Shown here: in pieces, positions 1-26,488 of the stretch
Layout of the letters: each line of letters opens with the position of its first letter
Numbering within the stretch: position 1 is the stretch's first letter
The notes under the pieces: generated by a model
Told to the model about the DNA's origin: nothing
What the model saw: the letters and a program-made list of their open reading frames with translations, nothing else
The model's database searches: none
Position numbers and translations under genes: made by a program
Source: Chara braunii
Taxonomy: Eukaryota > Plantae > Charophyceae
NCBI GenBank assembly: GCA_003427395.1
Contig: BFEA01000020.1
Coordinates: forward strand, 1,687,588-1,751,587
Reading direction: 5' to 3'
DNA length: 64,000 nt

Positions 1-3000
1 AACCTGACCAAGGAAAAAACTTTTATCATTTAAATACCTCCCATCTCAAGATAGATTGTTTCCTTCATTATCTTCGAGATGTTTGGAATTTTTGGAAAGA
101 TCATAGGGATCGTCTTAGAGATGACATTAAATGGTTCAATAACGGTCTATCATTTTTAGGCCGTAAATGCAATGAATATTCTAAGTTATTAGCAAAGCAA
201 AAACATGCGAAGGAAACTGATTTACAAAATAGAATTGCTAAATTACAAAGCAAGGAGGAAAATGAGGTTGATCAAGAGATACTTGATAATATATATGAGG
301 AACTCAAATGTCTAGAGTCCCAGCTTTTGACCCAAATGGAATATAGATGGCAAGGACTAAGAATTAGGGGTAAACTCAAGATTCAGAATATGGAAGGCTC
401 TATGGATGAGCGTTTCTTTGCTCTGGCTAGAGCCAGAACAGGAAGGACCATAATAGAGACTTTAGAGGATCCGACTGACTCTCATAAGGATTTGGTTACT
501 TCGACTGCAACGTGCTCTAAAATTGTCAGGGACTTTTTCAAATCACTTTTCACTTCACAAAATAATCATATTCCTAAGGAACAACGTATACTAGAGATGG
601 AAGAATTCCTATGGCCATTAAATAAATCTTTATCAGAAAAACAAAAGGAATTGATGGACAAACCTGTAGCAAAAGAAGAAATCTGGAAGACACTCTTATT
701 GATGGAGAAAGATAAATCTCCGGGTATAGATGGATTCCCAAAAGAATTTTGGGAAGCAACGTGGGACTTTATGTATGAAGATCTTATGGATTTTTATAAG
801 GCGGTATGAGAATCGGGTGAAATGGGAGAATTTGTAGAACAAGGGGTACTCACTTTATTGTATAAAAAAGGGGACAAGGCAAATATAAGAAATTATCGTC
901 CTATAACCCTTTTGACTGTGGTTTACAAATTCATAGCAAAAGCATTGGCGGATCGGTTGACTGCAATAATTCCAGAAATCATTCACCCAATACCAAACAA
1001 GTTTTATTATAGGAATGAATATTCAAGATAATATTCTTCTTGTAAATAAGCTTCTTAAAATATCTCGTCAATCCAAGCATAATGCAATTTTCATTTTCAT
1101 TGATTTTGAGAAGGCATATGACCATGTTGATTAACTTTTTCTAGACAAATGTCTGGAAAAGATGAATTTTGAGCCAAATTTTAGAAGACGGGTGAGAATT
1201 ATGCATCAGAATGCAACAACAAGGGTAATGGTCAACAACAATGTAGCACCCCCATTCCACTAGAAAGATCAGTAAGACAAGGGGATCTGTTGGCTCCTTT
1301 CATTTTTGTTATAATTATGGAGGCATTGGCAGATTTGCGATACCATAAGGATATTAGAAGAATACAAATTACTAGCATACCAGAAGAGGCAATTCGAGTG
1401 TGCTCTCTATTTGCTGATGACCTATCCATTATGGTAGACGCAACTCAAGAGAATATGGAAGAAATTCATAAGTTGATGGAAATTTTTTTCCGCCTCTCGG
1501 ATATGAGAGCCAATTGGGGTAGTAAAACGACAGGCTGGTGGATACATCATCAAGGTGGTCGTCCTCCTGAATTACCAAGAATAAAGTGGTTGTCATTGGA
1601 TAACCCAATTAGGATATTAGGGATTTTCCTTTCTACTGAGGGCAGGCAAAAAAATCACAATGAATGGATCTCCCAACCTGCTCAGTCTAAAATAGAAATG
1701 TGGAAGAATAAACATACATCCATTTTTGGAAGAATAATAATCATTAATAATGTTATTCTAGCTTCTATATGGTACAAATCAGGAATCTGGTCCTTGGAAA
1801 AACGTTCTATTAAATCTCTCCAGAAACAACTATCCGTCTTTCTGTGGAGGGGCAATCATGAGTATAGTAATGTCATCAACAGAGTGGCATGACAATCTAT
1901 TATCCAACCAAAAGTTGGGGGGGGGGTGAAAATTCTTGATCCTCTGACACAAGTCAAGGCACTCTCAATCCAATGGTTGCAACGTCTTTTATTCAATCCT
2001 CAGACTCGATGGGCACCATTGACATTAAAGCAAATCAGGAGACTTGCTCCTCCAACCCTGAAGGAATTGACCCCTTGACTTGGTTGAAAAATCGATCGTG
2101 GACTATTCATAGGGGAAAATCCAATCCTGTAGCATCAACATTGAGTTCGGATAGACAAGCTATCAGACTTGATTTAAAAAATGATCCTTTTTGGACTTCC
2201 ATGTTGAAAACCTGGAGACAACTCCCTCTAACAGACAAGTTATCGCCAGAAAGGTGGGAGGAAATATGTCAACAACCTTTTTTTGATAATAGATGGATTC
2301 GTGATTCCCAAGGATTTGTCTTTCATTGTATGCATTCACCTTGGAAGGGATGGATTGGAAATGGTATTATAAGGATAAAGGATATTTGGGATACTGATAC
2401 CAATGAGTGGATTGCTCCGGCCAAACTGAAGACAAGGCTAAGGTATTTTCACCATCCTGTAGAAACACTTGAGAAGGTAATTGAACTCATCCCTATTGAA
2501 TGATTTCGTATCCTTAGGAAAGACCCTAAGTTAATAATAAATGATTGGGTAGCCTTCAATGATTAATCTGAGTCTATTGGCTTAATTTTGGATCAAGACC
2601 AAAATGAGAATATTTTTCTACAAAAATTTTCCTTGTCATCCACAAATCTAGTGATTCCTAGGGAGCAAGAGGAAACCTGTTGGGTTCATGTGCAACAGAT
2701 TTTCAGAATAAGGGTAATGAGGATTATGGATTCTTGGGTTGCCTTTAAACCGGAATGTCCCATTTCAAAACTCCCTTTTGACCCGGCTAATTGGGTTTGG
2801 AATTCGGTCATAAGAACAAGGAAGCATAATAGATCATTCAAAAGGTCTATTCACTCTCTTAAGGTCAAATCTGCATATCGGATGCTTAGACCTAGAATTA
2901 ACCTTAAGGACAAGATTTTCACCAGATGGATGAAACATTTTAATATCAGTAGGGAGGAATTAAGGTTGGTTAGGTGGTTCAAAACAATCAAGGATAAACC

Positions 3001-4048
3001 AGCCAAAATAGCTTCTCTTCAGTGGCAAATTGAACATAGATGTCTATCAGTAAATGATTGGCTGATAGACACATCAACACTAGAACAGAGAGGATTGGCA
3101 GAAAGGTGGTGCAAGCTATGCAAAACAGCTTTCCCAAGCAGACTATATGCTGAAACAATAGAGCATATTTTTATGCAATGCCCGGGTTCTGTATGGCTTT
3201 GGAGGTGGTGCGATCGAATCTGGTCACAGTTAATCCCACTGGTGCCTTGGCCATGGAGTTGGAAAGCTATTCTTCTGGAGACCTGGAGTCTTGACCCGGA
3301 TTTAGTGGAAAGTGGTGAGGAACTTGTGGAAAATCTGAAATTTGTGGATAATCTGTTCCGTATGGGTAGAAGAGCGGCGATGTGGACCATATGGATGAGA
3401 AGATGCACGTATGAATGGGAAGGGGCAAGACTAGATGGTGCGGATTTTACAGAAACTATTAAACAACAAGTTCAAACAGATATATTAACCAATTGGGAAA
3501 GAACCAAGGAAAAGGTACAATTTCTCTCGAATAAAGCAGAAATCCAGAGTCATTTTCGAAAATTCAGTCACAAATGGTTGAATGGAAACCAGAGACGGAG
3601 AATTGGATGTGTCACTTGGAATGGTGCTGACAATGAAGATGCTGTTGGGTTTAAAAGAGATTACAAATTGGTTTTTGATGATTGGACTTCCATTGACACT
3701 TCAATTCCCATGAGACCTTTCTCAGATTTCCCAACTCCTTTCCCTCCTCCTGCAACAGCCATGGTTCCAAGTTCCTGGTATGGATTATAAGGATATCACT
3801 GCTAGTTTTACAAGAATATATCTGGCGTCCTGATAAAGGATGAAGAGGTAGTGTTATTTTCAGATTGCCAGGTGGCTGGAGGGTGTCGCTATTTTCTTCA
3901 AAATCTAGGTTCTTGTTCATGCTCTTGATTCCTTTATTTCCATTTTTCAAATTGTACATTCAAGGGACGCTGGACCCGGTCTCCAGCAGGTGATGCTCCC
4001 CACCAATAGATGGAGCTTCTTTTCAAAAAAAAAAAAAAAAAAAAAAAA
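1..4048 (+). mobile_element. Decayed L1/Tx1-type LINE: ORF2 RT and zf-RVT, 3' UTR and poly(A); 5' part outside window
   Basis: RT motifs KSPGIDG, YRPITLL, DFEKAYDHV, QGDLLAP and FADD, plus C-terminal CKLC..ETIEHIFMQC. Several stops and frameshifts (about 809, 990, 1890, 2500). Conserved 3' motif at about 3963-3987 and A24 tail at 4025-4048. Confidence 0.93.
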
Positions 4049-6489: not shown

Positions 6490-6704
6490 TTCCCCTTTCT
6501 CTTAGGGGTCAGTGGTGTGTATTGGGATATTCAAAATAGCACTTTCTTGTATGAGCGTGGCCAGAAATCAAATGATACAGTCCAGGCATAGTCGTGGTAT
6601 GAGCTTTGCTTGGCCGAAGAGCCTTGCTCAGCTCAGTACTGCGGCGATTTTTGTCAGGGACGCGGGGCCCGCTTCCCGGCTTTGGTATTAATAAACAGTG
6701 ACTT

Positions 6705-6757
<53 letters not shown>

Positions 6758-6948: not shown

Positions 6949-7036
6949 CTTTTCTTGTTTTTTGTGAAAGAGGATCAAACTTTATTAATATCAAAAAGGG
7001 GAACCGGGCCTGGCGTCCAGTCACACATGCGAGTTC
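6949..7036 (-). mobile_element. Short LINE 3' tail fused to the 3' end of a U6 copy (U6/LINE chimera)
   Basis: Minus strand after U6 ..AAATGGTCC reads gaactcgcatgtgtgactGGACGCCAGGCCCGGTTCCC..ATTAATAAAAG..cacAAAAAAcAAgAAAAg. Confidence 0.7.
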
Positions 7037-7074
7037 GGACCATTTCTCGATTTATGCGTGTCATCCTTGCGCAG
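7037..7074 (-). pseudogene. U6: U6 snRNA retrocopy, 3' half
   Basis: Reverse complement is CTGCGCAAGGATGACACGCATAAATCGAGAAATGGTCC, matching the plant U6 3' half. Confidence 0.95.
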
Positions 7075-7084
7075 GGGTCTAGTC

Positions 7085-7122
7085 CTGTCTCTTATACACA
7101 TCTAGATGTGTATAAGAGACAG
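7085..7122. other. Nextera mate-pair junction adapter (Tn5 mosaic ends); assembly artefact
   Basis: Exact CTGTCTCTTATACACATCTAGATGTGTATAAGAGACAG. Confidence 0.99.
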
Positions 7123-7184
7123 GGTTTAGTCATTTTGTAGAATATTTTTTTGACGTGAAATCCGTTTTGTAGTATGCATTGGCC

Positions 7185-7260
7185 CTTTTTTTTTTTTTTT
7201 TTTAAGAAAAAGCAACTTCATTATAAAAACCGGGAAATGGGCCCGGTGTCCCTCACATAG
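7185..7260 (-). mobile_element. LINE 3' tail nested in element B
   Basis: Minus strand GGGACACCGGGCCCATTTCCCGGT motif followed by poly(A) (T-tract at about 7185-7202). Confidence 0.65.
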
Positions 7261-9127
7261 ATGCTGATGCCATCATAGGCTAAGAAAGGCACTTCGGCCA
7301 ACCCTATCCCCGACCCCAGCCATCTAGCTACCGAGACCCCGGTCCCCCCCGTACTATCAGTCCCAAGTTGCTAAAAAGAACCTAAGCAACAAAAAGGTAG
7401 TTACCTAAATACAAAGAAAAGTCGAATTCAAACCCTATCTATTACTCAAACGCTGTTTACTATTGACCCGTCATCAAAAAACCGCACAAAACACAAAATT
7501 ACTCGGAATTACACAAACCCTAGCCAGTACTAATTACCGCAAACAATAATGCTAGAACCATAACCACTACTGCCAACCGATGGGAGACATACACTGCTAA
7601 ACTTGGTATCTCTCTTACCCTAATTACTCTCCTATTCAGCCCTGAGGCAAAAGATTCGAATCCATAACTACTAAACACAATAACCAAATAAACCGTAAAG
7701 AAGCACCACTGGACAGCTATAAACCGAAATTTCGAATCTATACCGCAAAAACAATTCGAAGCTATAACTGCTAAGCGCAATAAGCAATGAAATCATCAAA
7801 AGTTGCTCAAACCAATAGATGATCGCACGCTGTAATTACTAATTATGTAAAGTTGCCCAAACCCTGATTGCCACTAGACAGCAATTCTAACCACGATCAC
7901 TAGTCCGATCAACTTCAGAATCACGGATTATATCACAACTATCTAAAGCCTCGCTACCACGGTCACACATATCACAATCGTAAAGTCGTCGAAACCCCAA
8001 GATCAGGAGATCCTGAGCAACACCACGTCCAAAGCAGGAGTAAAAGCAACAGTGGACAACCCTGGTCATAGCTGAAGCCCCGGCCGAGCATTTGTCATCG
8101 TTATAGGCGATACCAATCACAGTGTGTGGTCCATCGTCTCTCTCCCGGAAGTCGACGTTTACCGGTGCACTCTCATCCGTCGTCTCTGGCTCAGCGACTG
8201 AAGACCTAGCCCAAACCATCTCATTCAGCAGCACCATCACGCCGATAGCAGGGGAGGAGCATAATCGATTGATCTGTCGTCCCGAGCCTAGGCACAGCGC
8301 CCAAAAGTCGATGCTAAGGTTCGATACTGAAGATTACGTATCTGCAATCAGCGGGCGAAGCCCCTGATTGGGTCATAATTCTGATATGTACGGTGCGCAG
8401 ATCCTACCCGTTAACCGTCCCCACATCTCTGCCTTCCTCTCACGGTCAATCCAGGATTACCAACAAGCGTTGACCAAGACTGGCTATGGCAGGTGCATGG
8501 TACTGCCCCCTCGAAGCGGCCTCCACCTCGGCGCCCTCGCGCTCTATCACCCCACCGCCTCCGCCATACCCAACAGCAAGCTCTGGCTGAGCATAGCTTA
8601 ACGACAGCTACACCCGTGCGATCCCCCGCTGCCTGCGCACCCTTTTGGTTTGGGCGGGAAGCCATTTTCCATTGAGAAAACTACCCTACCGAGGGTAGGG
8701 TACATTTCTCAACTGCAGTGCCTTTCCTTTTTTTTGTTTTTTTAGACCTGATTGCATCCTGAAACGGAGGAACTCTGACAGCTGTGTTTGGCTGTCTGGC
8801 ATCAAACTCTTTTCCTTCTTTGGGCAATGAATGCATTTGGCCATCCACGTCGTCCCCGTCCATTTTACAAATGGTGACCTCCTGTCCCCTCACCACGGGG
8901 AGTATCCCTTTTTCACGGAGAGTATCCCTTTTTCACGGAGACCTTCACTCCGACTGTTCCAGACATGTTTCATTTCTCCCAGTTACGTTAAAAAAAATAA
9001 GGAGAAAAGCTGTTTCTAGCGTTTTTTTCAGTTTTTTTATTTGTTGTTCCGAATTTATTAATGTCGACATGGCATCACACCGTTGAGTTTTCTAAGCTCA
9101 ACAACCGTAGGTGGGACCAGACCCCAG

Positions 9128-9695
9128 GGGCCAAGTCCGACTAGCGAAGAGTTACGCTTCGCGGCCAGGTTTTCGACGACGTGGGACGTTCTGTGACAGG
9201 TCTCAGTCGCCGATCGGCTGCAGATCCACGCCCAGCGTTGTTGGCCTCAGTTTCATGTAGGGTCGTTTCGTTCGGCTAATAGGATGATTTTAAATTATTT
9301 TGGTGTTGTTTTTGTTGGCCACTTCCGTTGGGCGGGAAGCTTCAATTCTATGTTTTTTTTACCCATGGGGTGTTTTTGAAGCTTCCCGCCCTCATTCTTT
9401 TGTTTTTTTTAATGTGCAGAAATACACAATATCATAATGGCCTGAGAGCAACTACCTTCAGAGGACTCAGCCCATTGGCTGAGTCGAACTCTCATCCAGA
9501 AAAAGGGGCGACGAATGCGATGGCTCACAGCCTACTGGCTGATGCGAGTACCCTCACCTGAATTTCACTTTCTTTAGCTTGTAGAAAGCAAGATTTTTAA
9601 ATCCGAAAACAATACAGAAACCATTTTTCAAATGCCAAAAGCGCGTCACACAACCCTGTTCCACCGTTTTAATCGATGCTAGTGGGACTTGGCCC
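9128..9695. mobile_element. 568-bp MITE A inserted in U6 (Harbinger/Tourist-like, CAG TSD)
   Basis: 18-bp TIRs GGGCCAAGTCCGACTAGC (9128-9145) and GCTAGTGGGACTTGGCCC (9678-9695), 1 mismatch. CAG at 9125-9127 and 9696-9698. Confidence 0.88.
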
Positions 9696-9703
9696 CAGGG
9701 GGC

Positions 9704-9735
<32 letters not shown>

Positions 9736-9753
9736 ACGGATGTCCCGAAGGAC
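9696..9753 (-). pseudogene. U6: U6 snRNA retrocopy, 5' half
   Basis: Reverse complement is GTCCTTCGGGACATCCGTTAAAATTGGAACGATACAGAGAAGATTAGCATGCCCCCTG, including the ACAGAGA box. Confidence 0.95.
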
Positions 9754-9754
9754 C

Positions 9755-9815
9755 TTTTTTTTTTTTGTGGAAAGTTCGCATCTTTATTAAACCACTGGTA
9801 CTTGGCCCAGCTATA
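9755..9815 (-). mobile_element. LINE-like 3' tail whose poly(A) abuts the U6 5' end
   Basis: Minus strand GCTGGGCCAAGTACCAGTGGTTTAATAAAG..A12. A related copy lies at about 12102-12130 (+). Confidence 0.6.
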
Positions 9816-11815: not shown

Positions 11816-12226
11816 CCGCTCCATCTATTGGTGGGGAGCAACATCTGCTGGAAACCGGGTCCAGCGCCCCTAAATACGTCTTTACAAAACAGAACATCTT
11901 GAGAGTGGCGCCATTGTGCTGGAAACCGGGTCCAGCGTCCCATATCCAATCTATTTTTCCATACCTAACCTGCAGCAGGGTCGGGTATTGGGGGGGGAAG
12001 TACCGGGGGGCACCGGTGCCAGATGTTCGGGAAGTGAACGCCCGCTAGCCCCAGCCTCGGCATGGATCGGCATACCGGTCGGCCAAGGCTTGGACTCGGT
12101 AGCTGGGCCAAGTACTGGTGGTTTAACAGAAGCATCAGAGGCCGAGAGTCCATCCACAAGCAAACCGGAATACTGGGGCCTTTACCGAGCTTCGGCTCAT
12201 GCTGGAAACTGGGCCCAGCATCCCAT
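11816..12226 (-). mobile_element. Cluster of LINE 3' UTR fragments
   Basis: 11816-11872 is nearly identical (reverse complement) to the LINE tail at 3962-4015. The 3' motif repeats at 11917-11943 and 12199-12226. Confidence 0.7.
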
Positions 12227-19553: not shown

Positions 19554-19894
19554 AGGCCTGACCGTGAATCTGGAGCCCTACTCCACGGGTAGGAAGGGGC
19601 TAGAATCTGGTAGATAGGGTACACAGCAGGGAGGCTTCCCCTTACCATTATCTGCTATTGTTCAACTCTTGCTGGCTAGAAATTATATCTTAGTCCTTCA
19701 GGACATCCGTTAAAATTGGAACGATACAGAGAAGATTAGGCCTGACCGTGAATCTGGAGCCCTACTCCATGGGTAGGAAGGGGCTAGAATCTGGTAGATA
19801 GGGTACACAGCAGGGAGGCTTCCCCCTACCATTATCTGCTATTGTTCAACTCTTGCTGGCTATAAATTATATCTTAGTCCTTCAGGACATCCGT

Positions 19895-19921
<27 letters not shown>
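19554..19921. repeat. 184-bp tandem duplication that includes the U6 5' portion
   Basis: aggcctgaccgtgaatctgg.. starts at 19554 and 19738; about 3 differences between copies. Confidence 0.9.
19693..19739 (+). pseudogene. U6: U6 snRNA 5' fragment (product of the local duplication)
   Basis: GTCCTTCAGGACATCCGTTAAAATTGGAACGATACAGAGAAGATTAG. Confidence 0.92.
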
Positions 19922-19926
<5 letters not shown>

Positions 19927-19964
19927 GGCCCCTGCGCAAGGATGACACGCATAAATCAAGAAAT
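19877..19964 (+). pseudogene. U6: 3'-truncated, tailless U6 retrocopy with TSD
   Basis: U6 from nt 1 to ..AAATCAAGAAAT, flanked by AAATTATATCTTA (19864-19876) and AAATTATATCTCA (19961-19973). Confidence 0.95.
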
Positions 19965-22957
19965 TATATCTCATGTATGTTTTCCACCCCTGGGCCAGTA
20001 CAGCACAGAAATGCACCACGAGGTGCCCAATGAAGAGGCCAGACACACGGTGATTGCTGGCAGCAGGAAGCCAATGATTATCCTGACACAGTAAGGCCTC
20101 CTCCCGACCCATCCTCATGTCAATACCCTACCAGTACTGAAGCACAAGTACATCCAGCTATCGGCCGCGGGCGCCCGTCAGAATCCGGTAGGCAACACAG
20201 GCCACCAATTTTTTTTTTTGACGGCACGCCTGCGCTGTCTTTTTCGGGAGAAACTCGTATGCGACGAGTTTCTTTTCAGCAAGGCTGGGGCCGTGTACTA
20301 GCGGGTAAGGGCAACTTGGACCGAGTAGCAGTGACAAGCACCCAGGCTGGGCAGTACCCAGCCCTAGTGGAAGTGGAAGCGGACGAACCATATGCCGTAC
20401 GGGAACTCTGGATGCCATGCTCATGCAAAGCTGGCACAAGCACCTAGGCAAGGCAAGCTAGCACCCGCAGACATATCCTACCTTCCTTCCCCTGACTTAC
20501 CCAAGGCTAGGCAGAACTCGGACTAGCCGGAGCGGCTTTTATATCCCCACCCTACCCTAGAGTCTATAAGCCATTCAAGAGCAGACCCCCCCCCCCCCTG
20601 ATNCCCCCCCCAGACTAGGCAGTATGTCTTCTACTGGTCGTATAGCCCCCCCTGGAGAAAGCCTCCCCCTGGTTGTATAGAGCCCCTGGAGGTACTCCAC
20701 ATCGACGCAGCAGAGGGCCAACCCTATGTTGTCGACGAATAGACAGCCCCTCCTCCAGGCCCCAGTCATCAGCTGGCCTCCTCGACCCCCAAAGGCACCC
20801 ATGCCTGCTTGATCTATCCTCAGTATTAACTGCCTCCTACCTATCAGCAGATTCCCCCGGTCATCAGCTAGGTTCCTAACTGTAGGGATCGGAAGGGACC
20901 AACAACAAACTCAGTACGTGGTCCACGAACCTATTATAGGCTGTAATCTGAAAACTTGAGACTTGCAAGTGGGCCACCACTTATATTTCCACTAGCCCGT
21001 CGCCTGTCCCTCCGATTGTGCATAGGTATGGTTGTGTGTGTATGTGTAGATGTCTAACCCTGCTGACCAGTTGCATACAGTTGTATAGTCGTATATACAA
21101 TTATACGGTTGTCAGTGCCCGTAGGCAGTGTATGGTAATATGTGTAGTGTATGGAGGCAGTGGCATGTGGGGTATGTGAAGAGACGACAGGCCAAGCTGA
21201 ACAAGGACTCCCATAAAGTCCCCAGCCAGACTCGAACCCACTAATGGTACCTATGTGTAGTATGGCAGACTGGGGAGATCAGCAGAGGAACAGCGACAAG
21301 CAACCCACGCAGTGTCGAGACCCGACATACAGTGGTGCACAGGCAGTGTCCGTAATAGCTTACCTGCGTCAGCCCAAGGGGGTATCCAAGTGACCATACA
21401 TTATGCAAACACCCTCCAGTTCTCGGCACAGAGGTGTGGAGTTTTGAACACACAACCTCAGAGCACAATGCACATAACCACTGAGCCCCAGGCCACTTGC
21501 AGTTTCAAACTCCTCAAGCGCTGGCTGGCAAGGAGGGCTGAAGCTAGCAAAAACCAAAAAATAGTAATAGCCACTGGACGGCCAAGAATGAAACCCTGTG
21601 ACGCTGCTCTTTTTTCTTTTTCTTTTCTTTTTTGAAGAAACACCCCAAGTAGTTGGTAGGGATGCTGATAAGAGCAGTCTCCACTAGCAAGCTCATGGAC
21701 GCTGCTCGTTTGGGTTGCACAGACTTACATCTGGACATGACATTCAAAATAGTGTCCACGACTGCGTGTCTACAACAATCCAGTTCTTTTTTTCCCCATT
21801 ACAAACCTATTTGATATTCACTAGCTACATTCAGTGTGACCAACTTATAACCACTAGACCGAGTGCGGCTGACATGAGAAATGAAGCGCCAGTAATTTTA
21901 TCTGTGGCATAGCTGATTGGCTCCCACTACAGCTCAAACAACAGCCAAGCCATGGAACGGGCAGTAGAGACCTGCTCCATGACCACTGCAAAGAAAACAA
22001 CACTCCACACACAACAAAGAATCAACAAACCCTTAAGAAATTGAAGTCAAATTATACATAGATGTAGATGTTAATAACCAGATCAGTAATTAATCGTGAT
22101 TGACACAATAATGTTAGGTCCTACCACCCCTCACTGGCCCTCAGAGGAGAGCACAAAAGAACAACACTGAGGTGAGAGAAGTCAGCATGGATGTCTCAGT
22201 TCAAACTTCAAACGGAAGAACTCAACAGAAGAAGATGTTCCGTTCCAAATCCAAGACCGGCTGCAAATCACCTGTCAAAATCCATTATGCAATTCAAAAT
22301 GCCATACTAAAACGAGGATCAAATAAGTGCAGCAACAACTAAAAGGTACTAAACTCTATTCTTGCTGCGGAGCCTCGATACACATGGTCTTTTCCCTCTC
22401 CTCTGCCGTTCAACCAAACGGGTTAACAACAACATCGACCCCCATGCACTTCATGTCACTGTACCTACCACTCCACTAACGACCGGCGCCTACAGAAGAC
22501 TCCCAAGCACTGAAAGGTTACACATGCCCGATCCATTCAGACATCATATGCATATGAACCTCTTGACAATCACAGGGATTACAAACTCAGATGCAGCATG
22601 GTAGAATCAGGTAGTTGAGCGCAATGCCCCAAACACAAATATGGCAAGTGTGTAAGCATGTGTGTTCACATGTTTGCTATATGTGTTGTCAACTTATCTT
22701 TGCTATTCACAATACCAAAACAGCATGATTGTCCCAGACAGTTAGCACTTTCACCAACTCATCAGGAGGTTGGTCCAAATACTCCCAGGATGCATTCGAC
22801 TGATGAAAGAGGACTAACCGCATCGCCCAGACAGGGCCAGAGTTAGCAACACCCCTGAGAAAACCCTCAACAAAAATGGCAGCAAGCCCAATGAAGTAAT
22901 CAGTGCAGTAAGGCGGAGAAACAGTGCCATAATACCCACTCTACACCCCCACTCATC

Positions 22958-25013: not shown

Positions 25014-25075
25014 ATTTAAATTGCAACAATATAGAGAAGATAAACAAGATGAGATACAAATCAAGAAATGGTCCC
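25014..25075 (+). pseudogene. U6: Highly degenerate U6 retrocopy with internal deletion
   Basis: taaattgcaacaatatagagaagata..gatga..aaatcaagaaatggtccc followed by an A-rich tail; colinear with U6. Confidence 0.65.
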
Positions 25076-26307
25076 AAAAAAGAAAAGAGAAACAGCCCTT
25101 TCAAAGGACACGAAACCCAGTCGCCACTACAGATATCTATCATACACTATGACACATGACAAGTTCATACAACAGCAAATTTATTCTGAAAAAGGAAAAC
25201 GGAAGAAAAGAAACAGAACTAGCCCTCGACGGCAAGGACAAAAATAGCCCGGCCACTGATCCATGTGCAGATAATGCACATGAAAAACATATCTCTGCAC
25301 AACATCCAATTGCGTTCTTTTTTCCACTTCCTTTCTTTTTTTTCCCCTTTTTTTTTTCGATCCTTTTAGAAGGGCAACGACGTTGAGATATCATCATTGA
25401 TTTGACTGGCCCCAGGTATTTCACGATTATTCTGTTCTGTTCATCTGATTCGTTCTGGGTGTACCACTTCTTGCAGTCTTGTTGCTGCCATGCCTTTGCG
25501 CGATGTTTTATCAAATAACACCACCGGACGTGGCCAAGTCAAGCTGAGCATGGCCGAGGCACGAGCGACCAGGGCAGGCTTTTCTTTCCACATTCACCTG
25601 GTAGTAATAGGTGAATCTGGCCCAAATCACGGCCGGTGGCAACTACCGGCTGGTCTTCTGAAGGGCCTTCTACTAGACCCCACGTCACTTGCCAAGCAGA
25701 ATTTTTAAGCCATCGGTCTGATAGATCAACCAAATCCTCCGTGCAGCCCCCCGTCCCTGCGGTGGCCTTCGACAAAACTGCAGTTTTCCTGAGTTCATTT
25801 ATTAGAGGTTACGACTGAACCGTCCACTCTCCGAAGTCTATTTCCTATGGAGAGTACTCCTGCGGGCATACTCAAGGAGCACCCTCCTAAATATAATATA
25901 TTGTCTGCCTGATTACGGCCAGACATGGACGCATCTGGCCACAATCACGTCCACAGCTCGGTCCAAAAAGTCCTGGCGTGACAACGGGCCTCGCTCCACC
26001 ACTCACCACAGCGGCCTTATCTTGTTGCGCCCTTGTTGCACACACCCGCGTGGTGATTCACTCACCCGCACGGTGACAGCAAGAGAAGAGTGTGGTGAGT
26101 GGTGGTGTGAGGGTGACCCTTCTTTTTTCTTTTTTCTTTTCCATTTGAGTTCTTTCAATCTTTTGCAATTAATTTTGGAAACAAGCATGACAGACCGACC
26201 GGTCCGTGTACTTGTTCCTTGTAAACTCGACTTGTTCCTTGTAAACTTGTTCCTTGTAAACTCGACTTGTTCCTTGTAAACTCGACACCGTACAAAATGC
26301 CGCAATT

Positions 26308-26412
26308 GTCCTTCGGGACATCCGTTCAAATCGGAGCGATACAGAGAATGAAGATTATTAGCATGGCCCCTGCGCAAGTAAGGATGACACGCATAAATCG
26401 AGAAATGGTCCC
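26308..26412 (+). pseudogene. U6: Full-length U6 retrocopy with A-rich tail (AGPase intron 4, antisense to the gene)
   Basis: GTCCTTCGGGACATCC..AAATGGTCCC, tail at 26413-26440, possible TSD aaaa(t)gccgca, and three small insertions. Confidence 0.93.
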
Positions 26413-26488
26413 AAAAAATAATAATAATAATAAAAAAAAAGCCGCAGCAGCAGCAGCAGCATGATGTGTCATCCCGGGCGTTCCCTAC

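What the first reader, a model, noticed from the sequence alone, without database searches (positions are those of the whole stretch)
7037..9753. U6 copy split by two tandem TIR transposons at one site: candidate U6-targeting Harbinger-like family
Seen in sequence (minus strand): U6 5' half ..TAGCATG(C)CCC-CTG-[MITE A 9695..9128]-CTG-[element B 9124..7075]-CTG-CGCAAGG.. U6 3' half. Removing both inserts restores a full-length U6 with one mismatch. The two elements have different but related TIRs (GGGCCAAGTCC and GGGTCTRGTC) and share TTGGGCGGGAAGC internally (8650-8662, 9328-9340). Established knowledge: G-rich TIR starts with 3-bp TWA or CWG TSDs are typical of PIF/Harbinger. The known U6-specific DNA transposons (Dada-U6) lack TIRs and, from memory, duplicate the adjacent GCGCAA. 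Inference: a TIR family that repeatedly hits this U6 internal stem-loop site would be a convergent, apparently undescribed snRNA-targeting system. Alternative: a general CCC-CWG-GGG preference, since the first insertion creates a palindromic site for the second.
Basis: partly seen in the sequence, partly recalled or inferred. Interest (0 to 1): 0.9.

Follow-up and report, generated by a model that had tools for sequence, protein, structure and literature searches.

The report
Two MITEs in dead U6 copy
Two small Harbinger-type jumping genes sit back to back inside a dead copy of the splicing RNA U6 in the alga Chara; such copies are very common in this genome and carry the short sequence these elements seem to prefer, so true U6 targeting is possible but not shown.

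Summary
The split U6 is real in the assembly: U6 5' half / CTG / element A (568 nt) / CTG / element B / CTG / U6 3' half. The genome is Chara braunii. Two corrections. B is not a 2-kb element: it holds a nested 1,457-nt poly(A) insert, and a Nextera adapter replaces at least 95 nt of its 3' end. The U6 is a promoterless retrocopy; such copies occur about every 38 kb (8 in 301 kb of other Chara DNA). CWG duplications with GGG-starting TIRs match the NuwaI group of Harbingers, reported only from animals in 2015. No transposase was found, so membership is unproven. The only two other element flanks I saw in reads keep CCC-CTG but are not intact U6. Best reading (0.62): a short motif preference, with U6 hit because it is abundant and carries the motif, and the second element using the site the first recreated. 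Strict U6 targeting stays open (about 0.18); the genome-wide flank count could not be run. The scan noted related cases on other Chara DNA: CWG chains, and a Harbinger MITE twice in one U6.

The parts
9696..9753 (-). U6 snRNA retrocopy, 5' half (U6 1-58), ending in the first CTG (9698-9696); one G-to-C change at U6 position 52; preceded by an A run, no plant U6 promoter seen upstream
   Evidence: Rfam RF00026 54.1 bits; promoter check
9128..9695 (-). Element A: 568-nt non-coding MITE, 18-nt TIR starting GGGCCAAGTCC with one mismatch, internal hairpins; low copy number
   Evidence: (fold z -4.4); read depth
9125..9127 (-). Second CTG, shared between A and B
8640..9124 (-). Element B, 5' part (485 nt), TIR starting GGGTCTGGTC; shares the first 14 bases at 10 of 14 and an internal 13-mer plus GGCCAA with A; high-copy family
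   Evidence: depth 6,000-40,000 against about 27-50 for single-copy stretches
7183..8639 (-). Nested poly(A)-tailed insert in B, 1,457 nt counting one copy of the 7-nt duplication AAAAGGG (copies at 8646-8640 and 7189-7183); non-LTR-like, unidentified
   Evidence: joints and loose ends at 8640 in runs X2 and X5; 3' tail 71% like 6610-6725; no Pfam hit
7123..7182 (-). Element B, internal 3' part; other copies continue at least 95 nt beyond 7125
   Evidence: loose ends at 7125 (X2, 15 contigs; X5, 95 nt)
7085..7122 (.). Nextera mate-pair junction adapter (assembly artefact) standing in for the missing part of B
   Evidence: the same 38-mer occurs three times in the window and in L016 and L021
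7075..7084 (-). Last 10 nt of B (3' TIR), 9 of 10 complementary to its 5' end
7037..7074 (-). U6 retrocopy, 3' half, beginning with the third CTG (7074-7072)
6949..7036 (-). Non-U6 tail ending in an A-rich run, fused to the U6 3' end (retrocopy chimera)
   Evidence: tail origin not identified; also noted as s1-570293

Best explanation
A and B are non-autonomous MITEs of two related NuwaI-type (CWG-duplicating) Harbinger families in Chara braunii, moved in trans by a DDE_Tnp_4 transposase with a Myb/SANT partner encoded elsewhere (inferred; no such gene found). They prefer a short motif around the CWG, at least CCC-CWG and possibly TGGCCC-CWG (inferred from two flanks). U6 carries TGGCCC-CTG, and Chara holds tens of thousands of dead U6 retrocopies (extrapolated), so U6 copies are frequent targets without the system being U6-specific. 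The first insertion left a new good site: either CCC-CTG-GGG (B first), or A's own end TGGCCC followed by CTG-CGCAA, which copies the U6 site (A first). The second element used it. The order cannot be told. A poly(A) retroelement later or earlier entered B. Shown: the anatomy, the nested insert, the adapter, the retrocopy abundance. Inferred: the enzyme, the motif and the cause of the stacking.
For: TSD and TIR features match NuwaI. The NuwaI member Harbinger3_DR is known to use a long CWG-centred motif, not a gene. U6 copies: 8 in 300,687 nt, 27 per Mb, 95% interval 11-52, with poly(A) tails and no promoter in those inspected. U6 supplies 1.1% of CCC-CWG sites, 9% of GGCCC-CWG sites and 3 of 5 TGGCCC-CWG sites in that sample. 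An A copy in an unrelated soil sample (X5, 234 nt aligned) is flanked by CCC-CTG, which only 1.7% of CWG sites are, and then by sequence that is not intact U6. A B copy in X2 is flanked by TGGCCC-CTG and then non-U6 sequence.
Against: Only two outside flanks. The X5 flank has the U6 word GATTAGC five bases further out than in U6 and could be an altered U6. The X2 flank may have been laid only because it matches the reference onward. Both flanks could be ends of other elements stacked in a U6. Human-like contigs are dropped silently by the reads tool, which biases against U6 flanks. An unchecked note (s1-574132) reports a Harbinger-like MITE twice in another U6 copy. No autonomous partner was found.
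Confidence: 0.62

Rival explanations
1. A and B belong to a lineage of TIR Harbingers that specifically or strongly targets the U6 site at CCC/CTG, next to the Dada-U6 site, and stacks in tandem there as Dada families do; flanks that are not U6 are ends of other stacked members.
For: Two different families at one U6 position. Tandem insertions at one target are known for Dada. Harbinger3_DR shows that this group can read 15 bp. U6 is 3 of 5 TGGCCC-CWG sites in the sample. The X5 flank contains GATTAGC. Note s1-574132 (unchecked) describes another U6 with two Harbinger-like MITE insertions.
Against: Neither outside flank is intact U6. Stacking needs no U6 once the first element is in. Note s1-549799 (unchecked) describes a CWG chain whose title names no U6. 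Other notes report U6 copies split by unrelated elements at other positions, as expected for any abundant repeat. That 0 of 10 other U6 copies are split here is uninformative, because U6 copies far outnumber the elements.
Confidence: 0.18
2. The elements prefer the ends of their own kind (TIR end plus CWG), forming chains; U6 is hit because its sequence 5' of the CTG (TGGCCC) mimics the end of element A.
For: A's right end and the U6 5' side share TGGCCC before CTG. Both outside flanks read GGG when written as a TIR. Note s1-549799 reports chains joined through CWG.
Against: The two flanks align only weakly to the A or B TIRs (scores 2-5). A plain CCC-CWG preference predicts the same chains without any recognition of element ends.
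Confidence: 0.12
3. The locus is an assembly chimera: the adapter joins B's interior to the end of another B copy at a different U6, or the gap filler built a mosaic from several copies.
For: The adapter at 7085-7122 joins non-adjacent sequence; only 10 nt of B lie beyond it; the window has 12 N gaps and three such adapters; single-copy-depth contigs differ from the window at several places in all three runs; no shown contig bridges a junction.
Against: Both halves restore one U6 exactly. The U6/A and A/B junctions lie 2 kb from the adapter. If the two sides came from different loci, that would mean two U6 copies split at the same site, not none.
Confidence: 0.08

Closest known systems
NuwaI group of the PHIS (PIF/Harbinger) superfamily, e.g. 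Harbinger3_DR = NuwaI-2_DRer (PMC4482050, PMC3016246)
   Same: 3-bp CWG duplication; TIRs begin GGG; A's TIR of 18 bp lies in the 12-61 bp range; non-autonomous members exist; preference for a motif centred on CWG.
   Different: Reported from 16 animal genomes only in 2015; this is a charophyte alga. The flanking preference here looks like CCC-CWG rather than AAACAC-CWG-GTCTTT. No transposase or Myb gene tied to A or B.
Dada-U6 DNA transposons (PMC3706591, PMC8869645)
   Same: Cut-and-paste element inside U6 at almost the same place (Dada duplicates GCGCAA just after CT; here CTG is duplicated); tandem insertions occur at Dada targets.
   Different: Dada has no TIRs, makes 6-7-bp duplications, has 9-bp subterminal repeats matching U6, is 4.7-11 kb and coding, and its specificity is shown over many copies. 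Here: TIRs, 3-bp duplication, short non-coding elements, specificity not shown.
Tourist-like MITEs of plant PIF/Harbinger
   Same: Short, non-coding, TIR-bounded, 3-bp duplication, moved in trans (established knowledge; PMC2836001 abstract).
   Different: Plant PIF/Tourist duplicate TWA (PMC4482050); these duplicate CWG in a G+C-rich context.

Membership tests
NuwaI (PHIS/Harbinger) | CWG target-site duplication | tested here: met
   Three CTG triplets; removal restores U6, with intact paralogues as empty sites
NuwaI (PHIS/Harbinger) | TIR begins with GGG | tested here: met
   All four ends
NuwaI (PHIS/Harbinger) | TIR 12-61 bp | tested here: inconclusive
   A: 18 bp, met. B: only 10 nt of the 3' end survive the adapter
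NuwaI (PHIS/Harbinger) | Autonomous partner with DDE_Tnp_4 transposase and Myb/SANT protein sharing these TIRs | tested here: inconclusive
   No Harbinger motif in the window or in L016-L026; B ORF searches blank or spurious; whole genome not searchable
NuwaI (PHIS/Harbinger) | Transposase falls in the Nuwa clade | not testable with these tools
   No transposase sequence linked to A or B could be obtained
Dada-U6 | No terminal inverted repeats | tested here: not met
   A has an 18-nt TIR
Dada-U6 | 6-7-bp duplication GCGCAA/GCGAAA | tested here: not met
   Duplication is CTG; GCGCAA occurs once
Dada-U6 | Most copies inside U6 | tested here: inconclusive
   Two outside flanks, neither intact U6, one ambiguous
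PIF/Tourist MITE | TWA duplication | tested here: not met
   CTG

The most novel reading that the evidence does not exclude
A NuwaI-type Harbinger lineage in Chara has evolved a target motif that coincides with the U6 internal stem-loop, so that most insertions fall into the genome's abundant U6 retrocopies: a second, independent, TIR-bearing route to U6 targeting beside Dada-U6.
Probability: 0.18. Interest if true: 0.78.

Novelty: new member of a known kind. Interest (0 to 1): 0.4.

Why it matters
On the best reading it is a modest result: CWG-type Harbinger MITEs in a plant-lineage genome, where the 2015 survey had found that group in animals only, and a genome with an unusually large load of U6 retrocopies that other elements insert into. 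If the flank count showed real U6 enrichment, it would be a snRNA-targeting DNA transposon outside Dada, for which my paper searches found no report. It would also give a direct test of how gene-specific targeting can grow out of a loose motif preference when the target has multiplied as dead copies.

Tried and rejected
TIR pattern scans of viral and metagenome contigs: no hit, and 15 hits with no similarity to A or B. Back-translated Harbinger motifs in viral contigs, to get a seed protein: none. Harbinger transposase motifs in six frames of the window and 301 kb of other Chara DNA: none convincing. Protein searches with two B ORFs: blank, and one unrelated repeat protein. A search with window ORF 2567-3787 to reach more loci: blank. 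A or B copies in L016-L026: none. TIR-like words in L021 and L026 lie inside other fold-back repeats and have no matching second end, so I did not count them. I first read the near-identical 9-mers on both sides of the adapter as a Tn5 duplication, meaning B was complete; rejected because other B copies continue for 95 nt or more at that point. Extended TIRs that include CCC-CWG: rejected because A and B would overlap and no duplication would remain. Including the adapter in the one read call swamped the loose-end table, so only 24 of 923 rows were shown.

Full report
Source. The window is a gap-filled short-read assembly with 12 N runs and three Nextera mate-pair junction adapters. Its Gypsy reverse transcriptase has about a hundred relatives, mostly 75-90% identical, named Chara braunii, which confirms the organism given in earlier notes.

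Observation. On the minus strand the order is U6 1-58 (9753-9696), element A (9695-9128), CTG, element B (9124-7075), and the U6 3' part (7074-7037). The three boundary triplets are all CTG, and removing both inserts gives 93 nt of U6 with one mismatch against an intact Chara copy. A has an 18-nt TIR with one mismatch and folds back strongly (z -4.4). B's ends match at 9 of 10. A and B do not align over their length but share 10 of their first 14 bases and an internal 13-mer followed 8-9 nt later by GGCCAA. They are two related families.

Corrections to element B. Read contigs from the organism's own runs and from a soil metagenome join position 8640 to about 7175. The skipped 1,457 nt end in poly(A) and are bounded by a 7-nt duplication, so they are a nested retro-insert. 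Fifteen contigs in run X2 and one in X5 continue past 7125 with other sequence, for at least 95 nt. The adapter at 7085-7122 therefore replaces part of B, and only B's last 10 nt lie beyond it. The native B is roughly 650 nt or somewhat more (inference), a MITE like A. B's 5' part has a summed depth of 6,000-40,000 where single-copy stretches have about 27-50; A has 40-900. Overlapping contigs inflate these sums, so I read them only as tens to hundreds of copies for B and a few to about twenty for A. No contig among those shown bridges a junction.

The target. The split U6 has no plant U6 promoter upstream, follows an A run, and ends in a foreign tail with an A-rich end. It is a retrocopy. The window holds two more copies spanning the site and further fragments. 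In 300,687 nt of other Chara DNA fetched around Gypsy-containing gene models there are 8 more: 27 per Mb, 95% interval 11-52. The seven inspected lack a promoter and most have A tails. With an ungapped assembly of about 1.4 Gb (from memory) that is tens of thousands of copies; the sample is small and not random. None of the ten other copies is split at the CTG, which says little, because U6 copies far outnumber these elements. In the sample U6 supplies 1.1% of CCC-CWG sites, 9% of GGCCC-CWG sites and 3 of 5 TGGCCC-CWG sites. So the stricter the motif, the more a plain motif preference looks like U6 targeting in this genome.

Other insertion sites. The single read call showed two outside flanks. 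In soil run X5 a 250-nt contig aligns to A's left end over 234 nt, keeps CCC-CTG, and then departs from U6. Only 1.7% of CWG sites are preceded by CCC. This flank does carry GATTAGC five bases further out than U6 does, so an altered U6 is not excluded, nor is the end of a third element. In run X2 a B left end is preceded by TGGCCC-CTG and then non-U6 sequence; this row may have been kept because it matches the reference onward. The tool drops human-like contigs without notice, and U6 matches human U6 over 34 nt or more (from memory), so U6 flanks may be under-represented.

Mechanism. A CWG duplication with GGG-starting TIRs of 12-61 bp defines the NuwaI group of the PHIS superfamily, whose autonomous members encode a DDE_Tnp_4 transposase and a Myb/SANT protein and were found in 16 animal genomes only (PMC4482050). 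Its member Harbinger3_DR inserts into a 15-bp motif centred on CWG (PMC3016246). I infer that A and B are moved in trans by such an enzyme with a CCC-CWG-type preference. After a first insertion the duplicated CTG sits beside the element's own CCC or GGG end, which recreates the motif. If B came first the new site is CCC-CTG-GGG; if A came first it is TGGCCC-CTG-CGCAA, the same as U6. Either explains the tandem without U6 recognition. I found no transposase for these families, so the enzyme is inferred. Unchecked notes report three-gene Harbingers in this genome, a chain of Harbinger-type elements joined through CWG sites, a Harbinger-like MITE twice in another U6, and U6 copies split by unrelated elements. 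These are leads that cut both ways, not support.

Comparison. Dada-U6 lacks TIRs and duplicates GCGCAA immediately after the CT of this site (PMC3706591); it fails two defining tests here, so this is not Dada. The elements work like NuwaI Harbinger MITEs; membership rests on TSD and TIR only. My paper searches found no report of a Harbinger targeting an snRNA gene, or of CWG-type Harbingers in Chara; the library lacks most subscription journals and Repbase.

Verdict. Real feature, partly mis-described. Motif preference in a U6-rich genome 0.62, true U6 targeting 0.18, self-end targeting 0.12, chimera 0.08. New member of a known kind; interest 0.4. A genome-wide flank table would settle it.

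Noticed in passing
window 26308-26419 (+): A full U6 retrocopy lies antisense inside what appears to be an intron of an ADP-glucose pyrophosphorylase gene and carries three small duplications of 3-4 nt, like transposon excision footprints, none at the CTG site.
   Followed up: partly
window 19554-19978 (+): A 184-nt tandem duplication gives a 47-nt U6 5' fragment at 19693 in front of a full U6 copy at 19877; the copy is flanked by a repeated 12-nt AT-rich word, a likely target duplication.
   Followed up: partly
window 25018-25080 (+): A decayed U6 copy with its middle missing, followed by an A run.
   Followed up: no
L016-L026 (Chara scaffolds): U6 retrocopies at about 27 per Mb; the sheer load looks unusual for any genome and may deserve its own count.
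   Followed up: partly
window 7085, 39954, 42019; L016:6076; L021:56470: Nextera mate-pair junction adapters are built into the public assembly and can replace real sequence.
   Followed up: yes
window 7884-7961 and 9240-9255: Single-copy-depth contigs in all three runs differ from the window at several bases while neighbouring stretches are identical; assembly mosaic, strain difference or a near-identical second copy. In two runs a contig ends exactly at A's last base, 9128.
   Followed up: no
window 7183-8639 and 6610-6725: The nested poly(A) insert and a nearby poly(A)-tailed stretch share a 120-nt 3' tail at 71%; an unidentified non-LTR or SINE-like family.
   Followed up: partly
window 9798-9811 and 12102-12120: A recurring repeat word resembling A's TIR (one mismatch) sits 45 nt upstream of the split U6 and again at 12105; similar words follow the U6 at 19989. 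It seems part of a common hairpin repeat family.
   Followed up: no
window 2567-3787 (+): A 407-codon open frame between L1-like RT and zf-RVT fragments with no Pfam hit and no homologue found.
   Followed up: partly
L021:54366-54544: A 180-nt fragment of large-subunit rRNA far from any rDNA array, another likely retrocopy.
   Followed up: no
L026:30479-30855 and L021:4513-4760: Fold-back repeats (120-nt arms in L026) with an internal word similar to A's TIR core but no CWG-bounded second end.
   Followed up: partly
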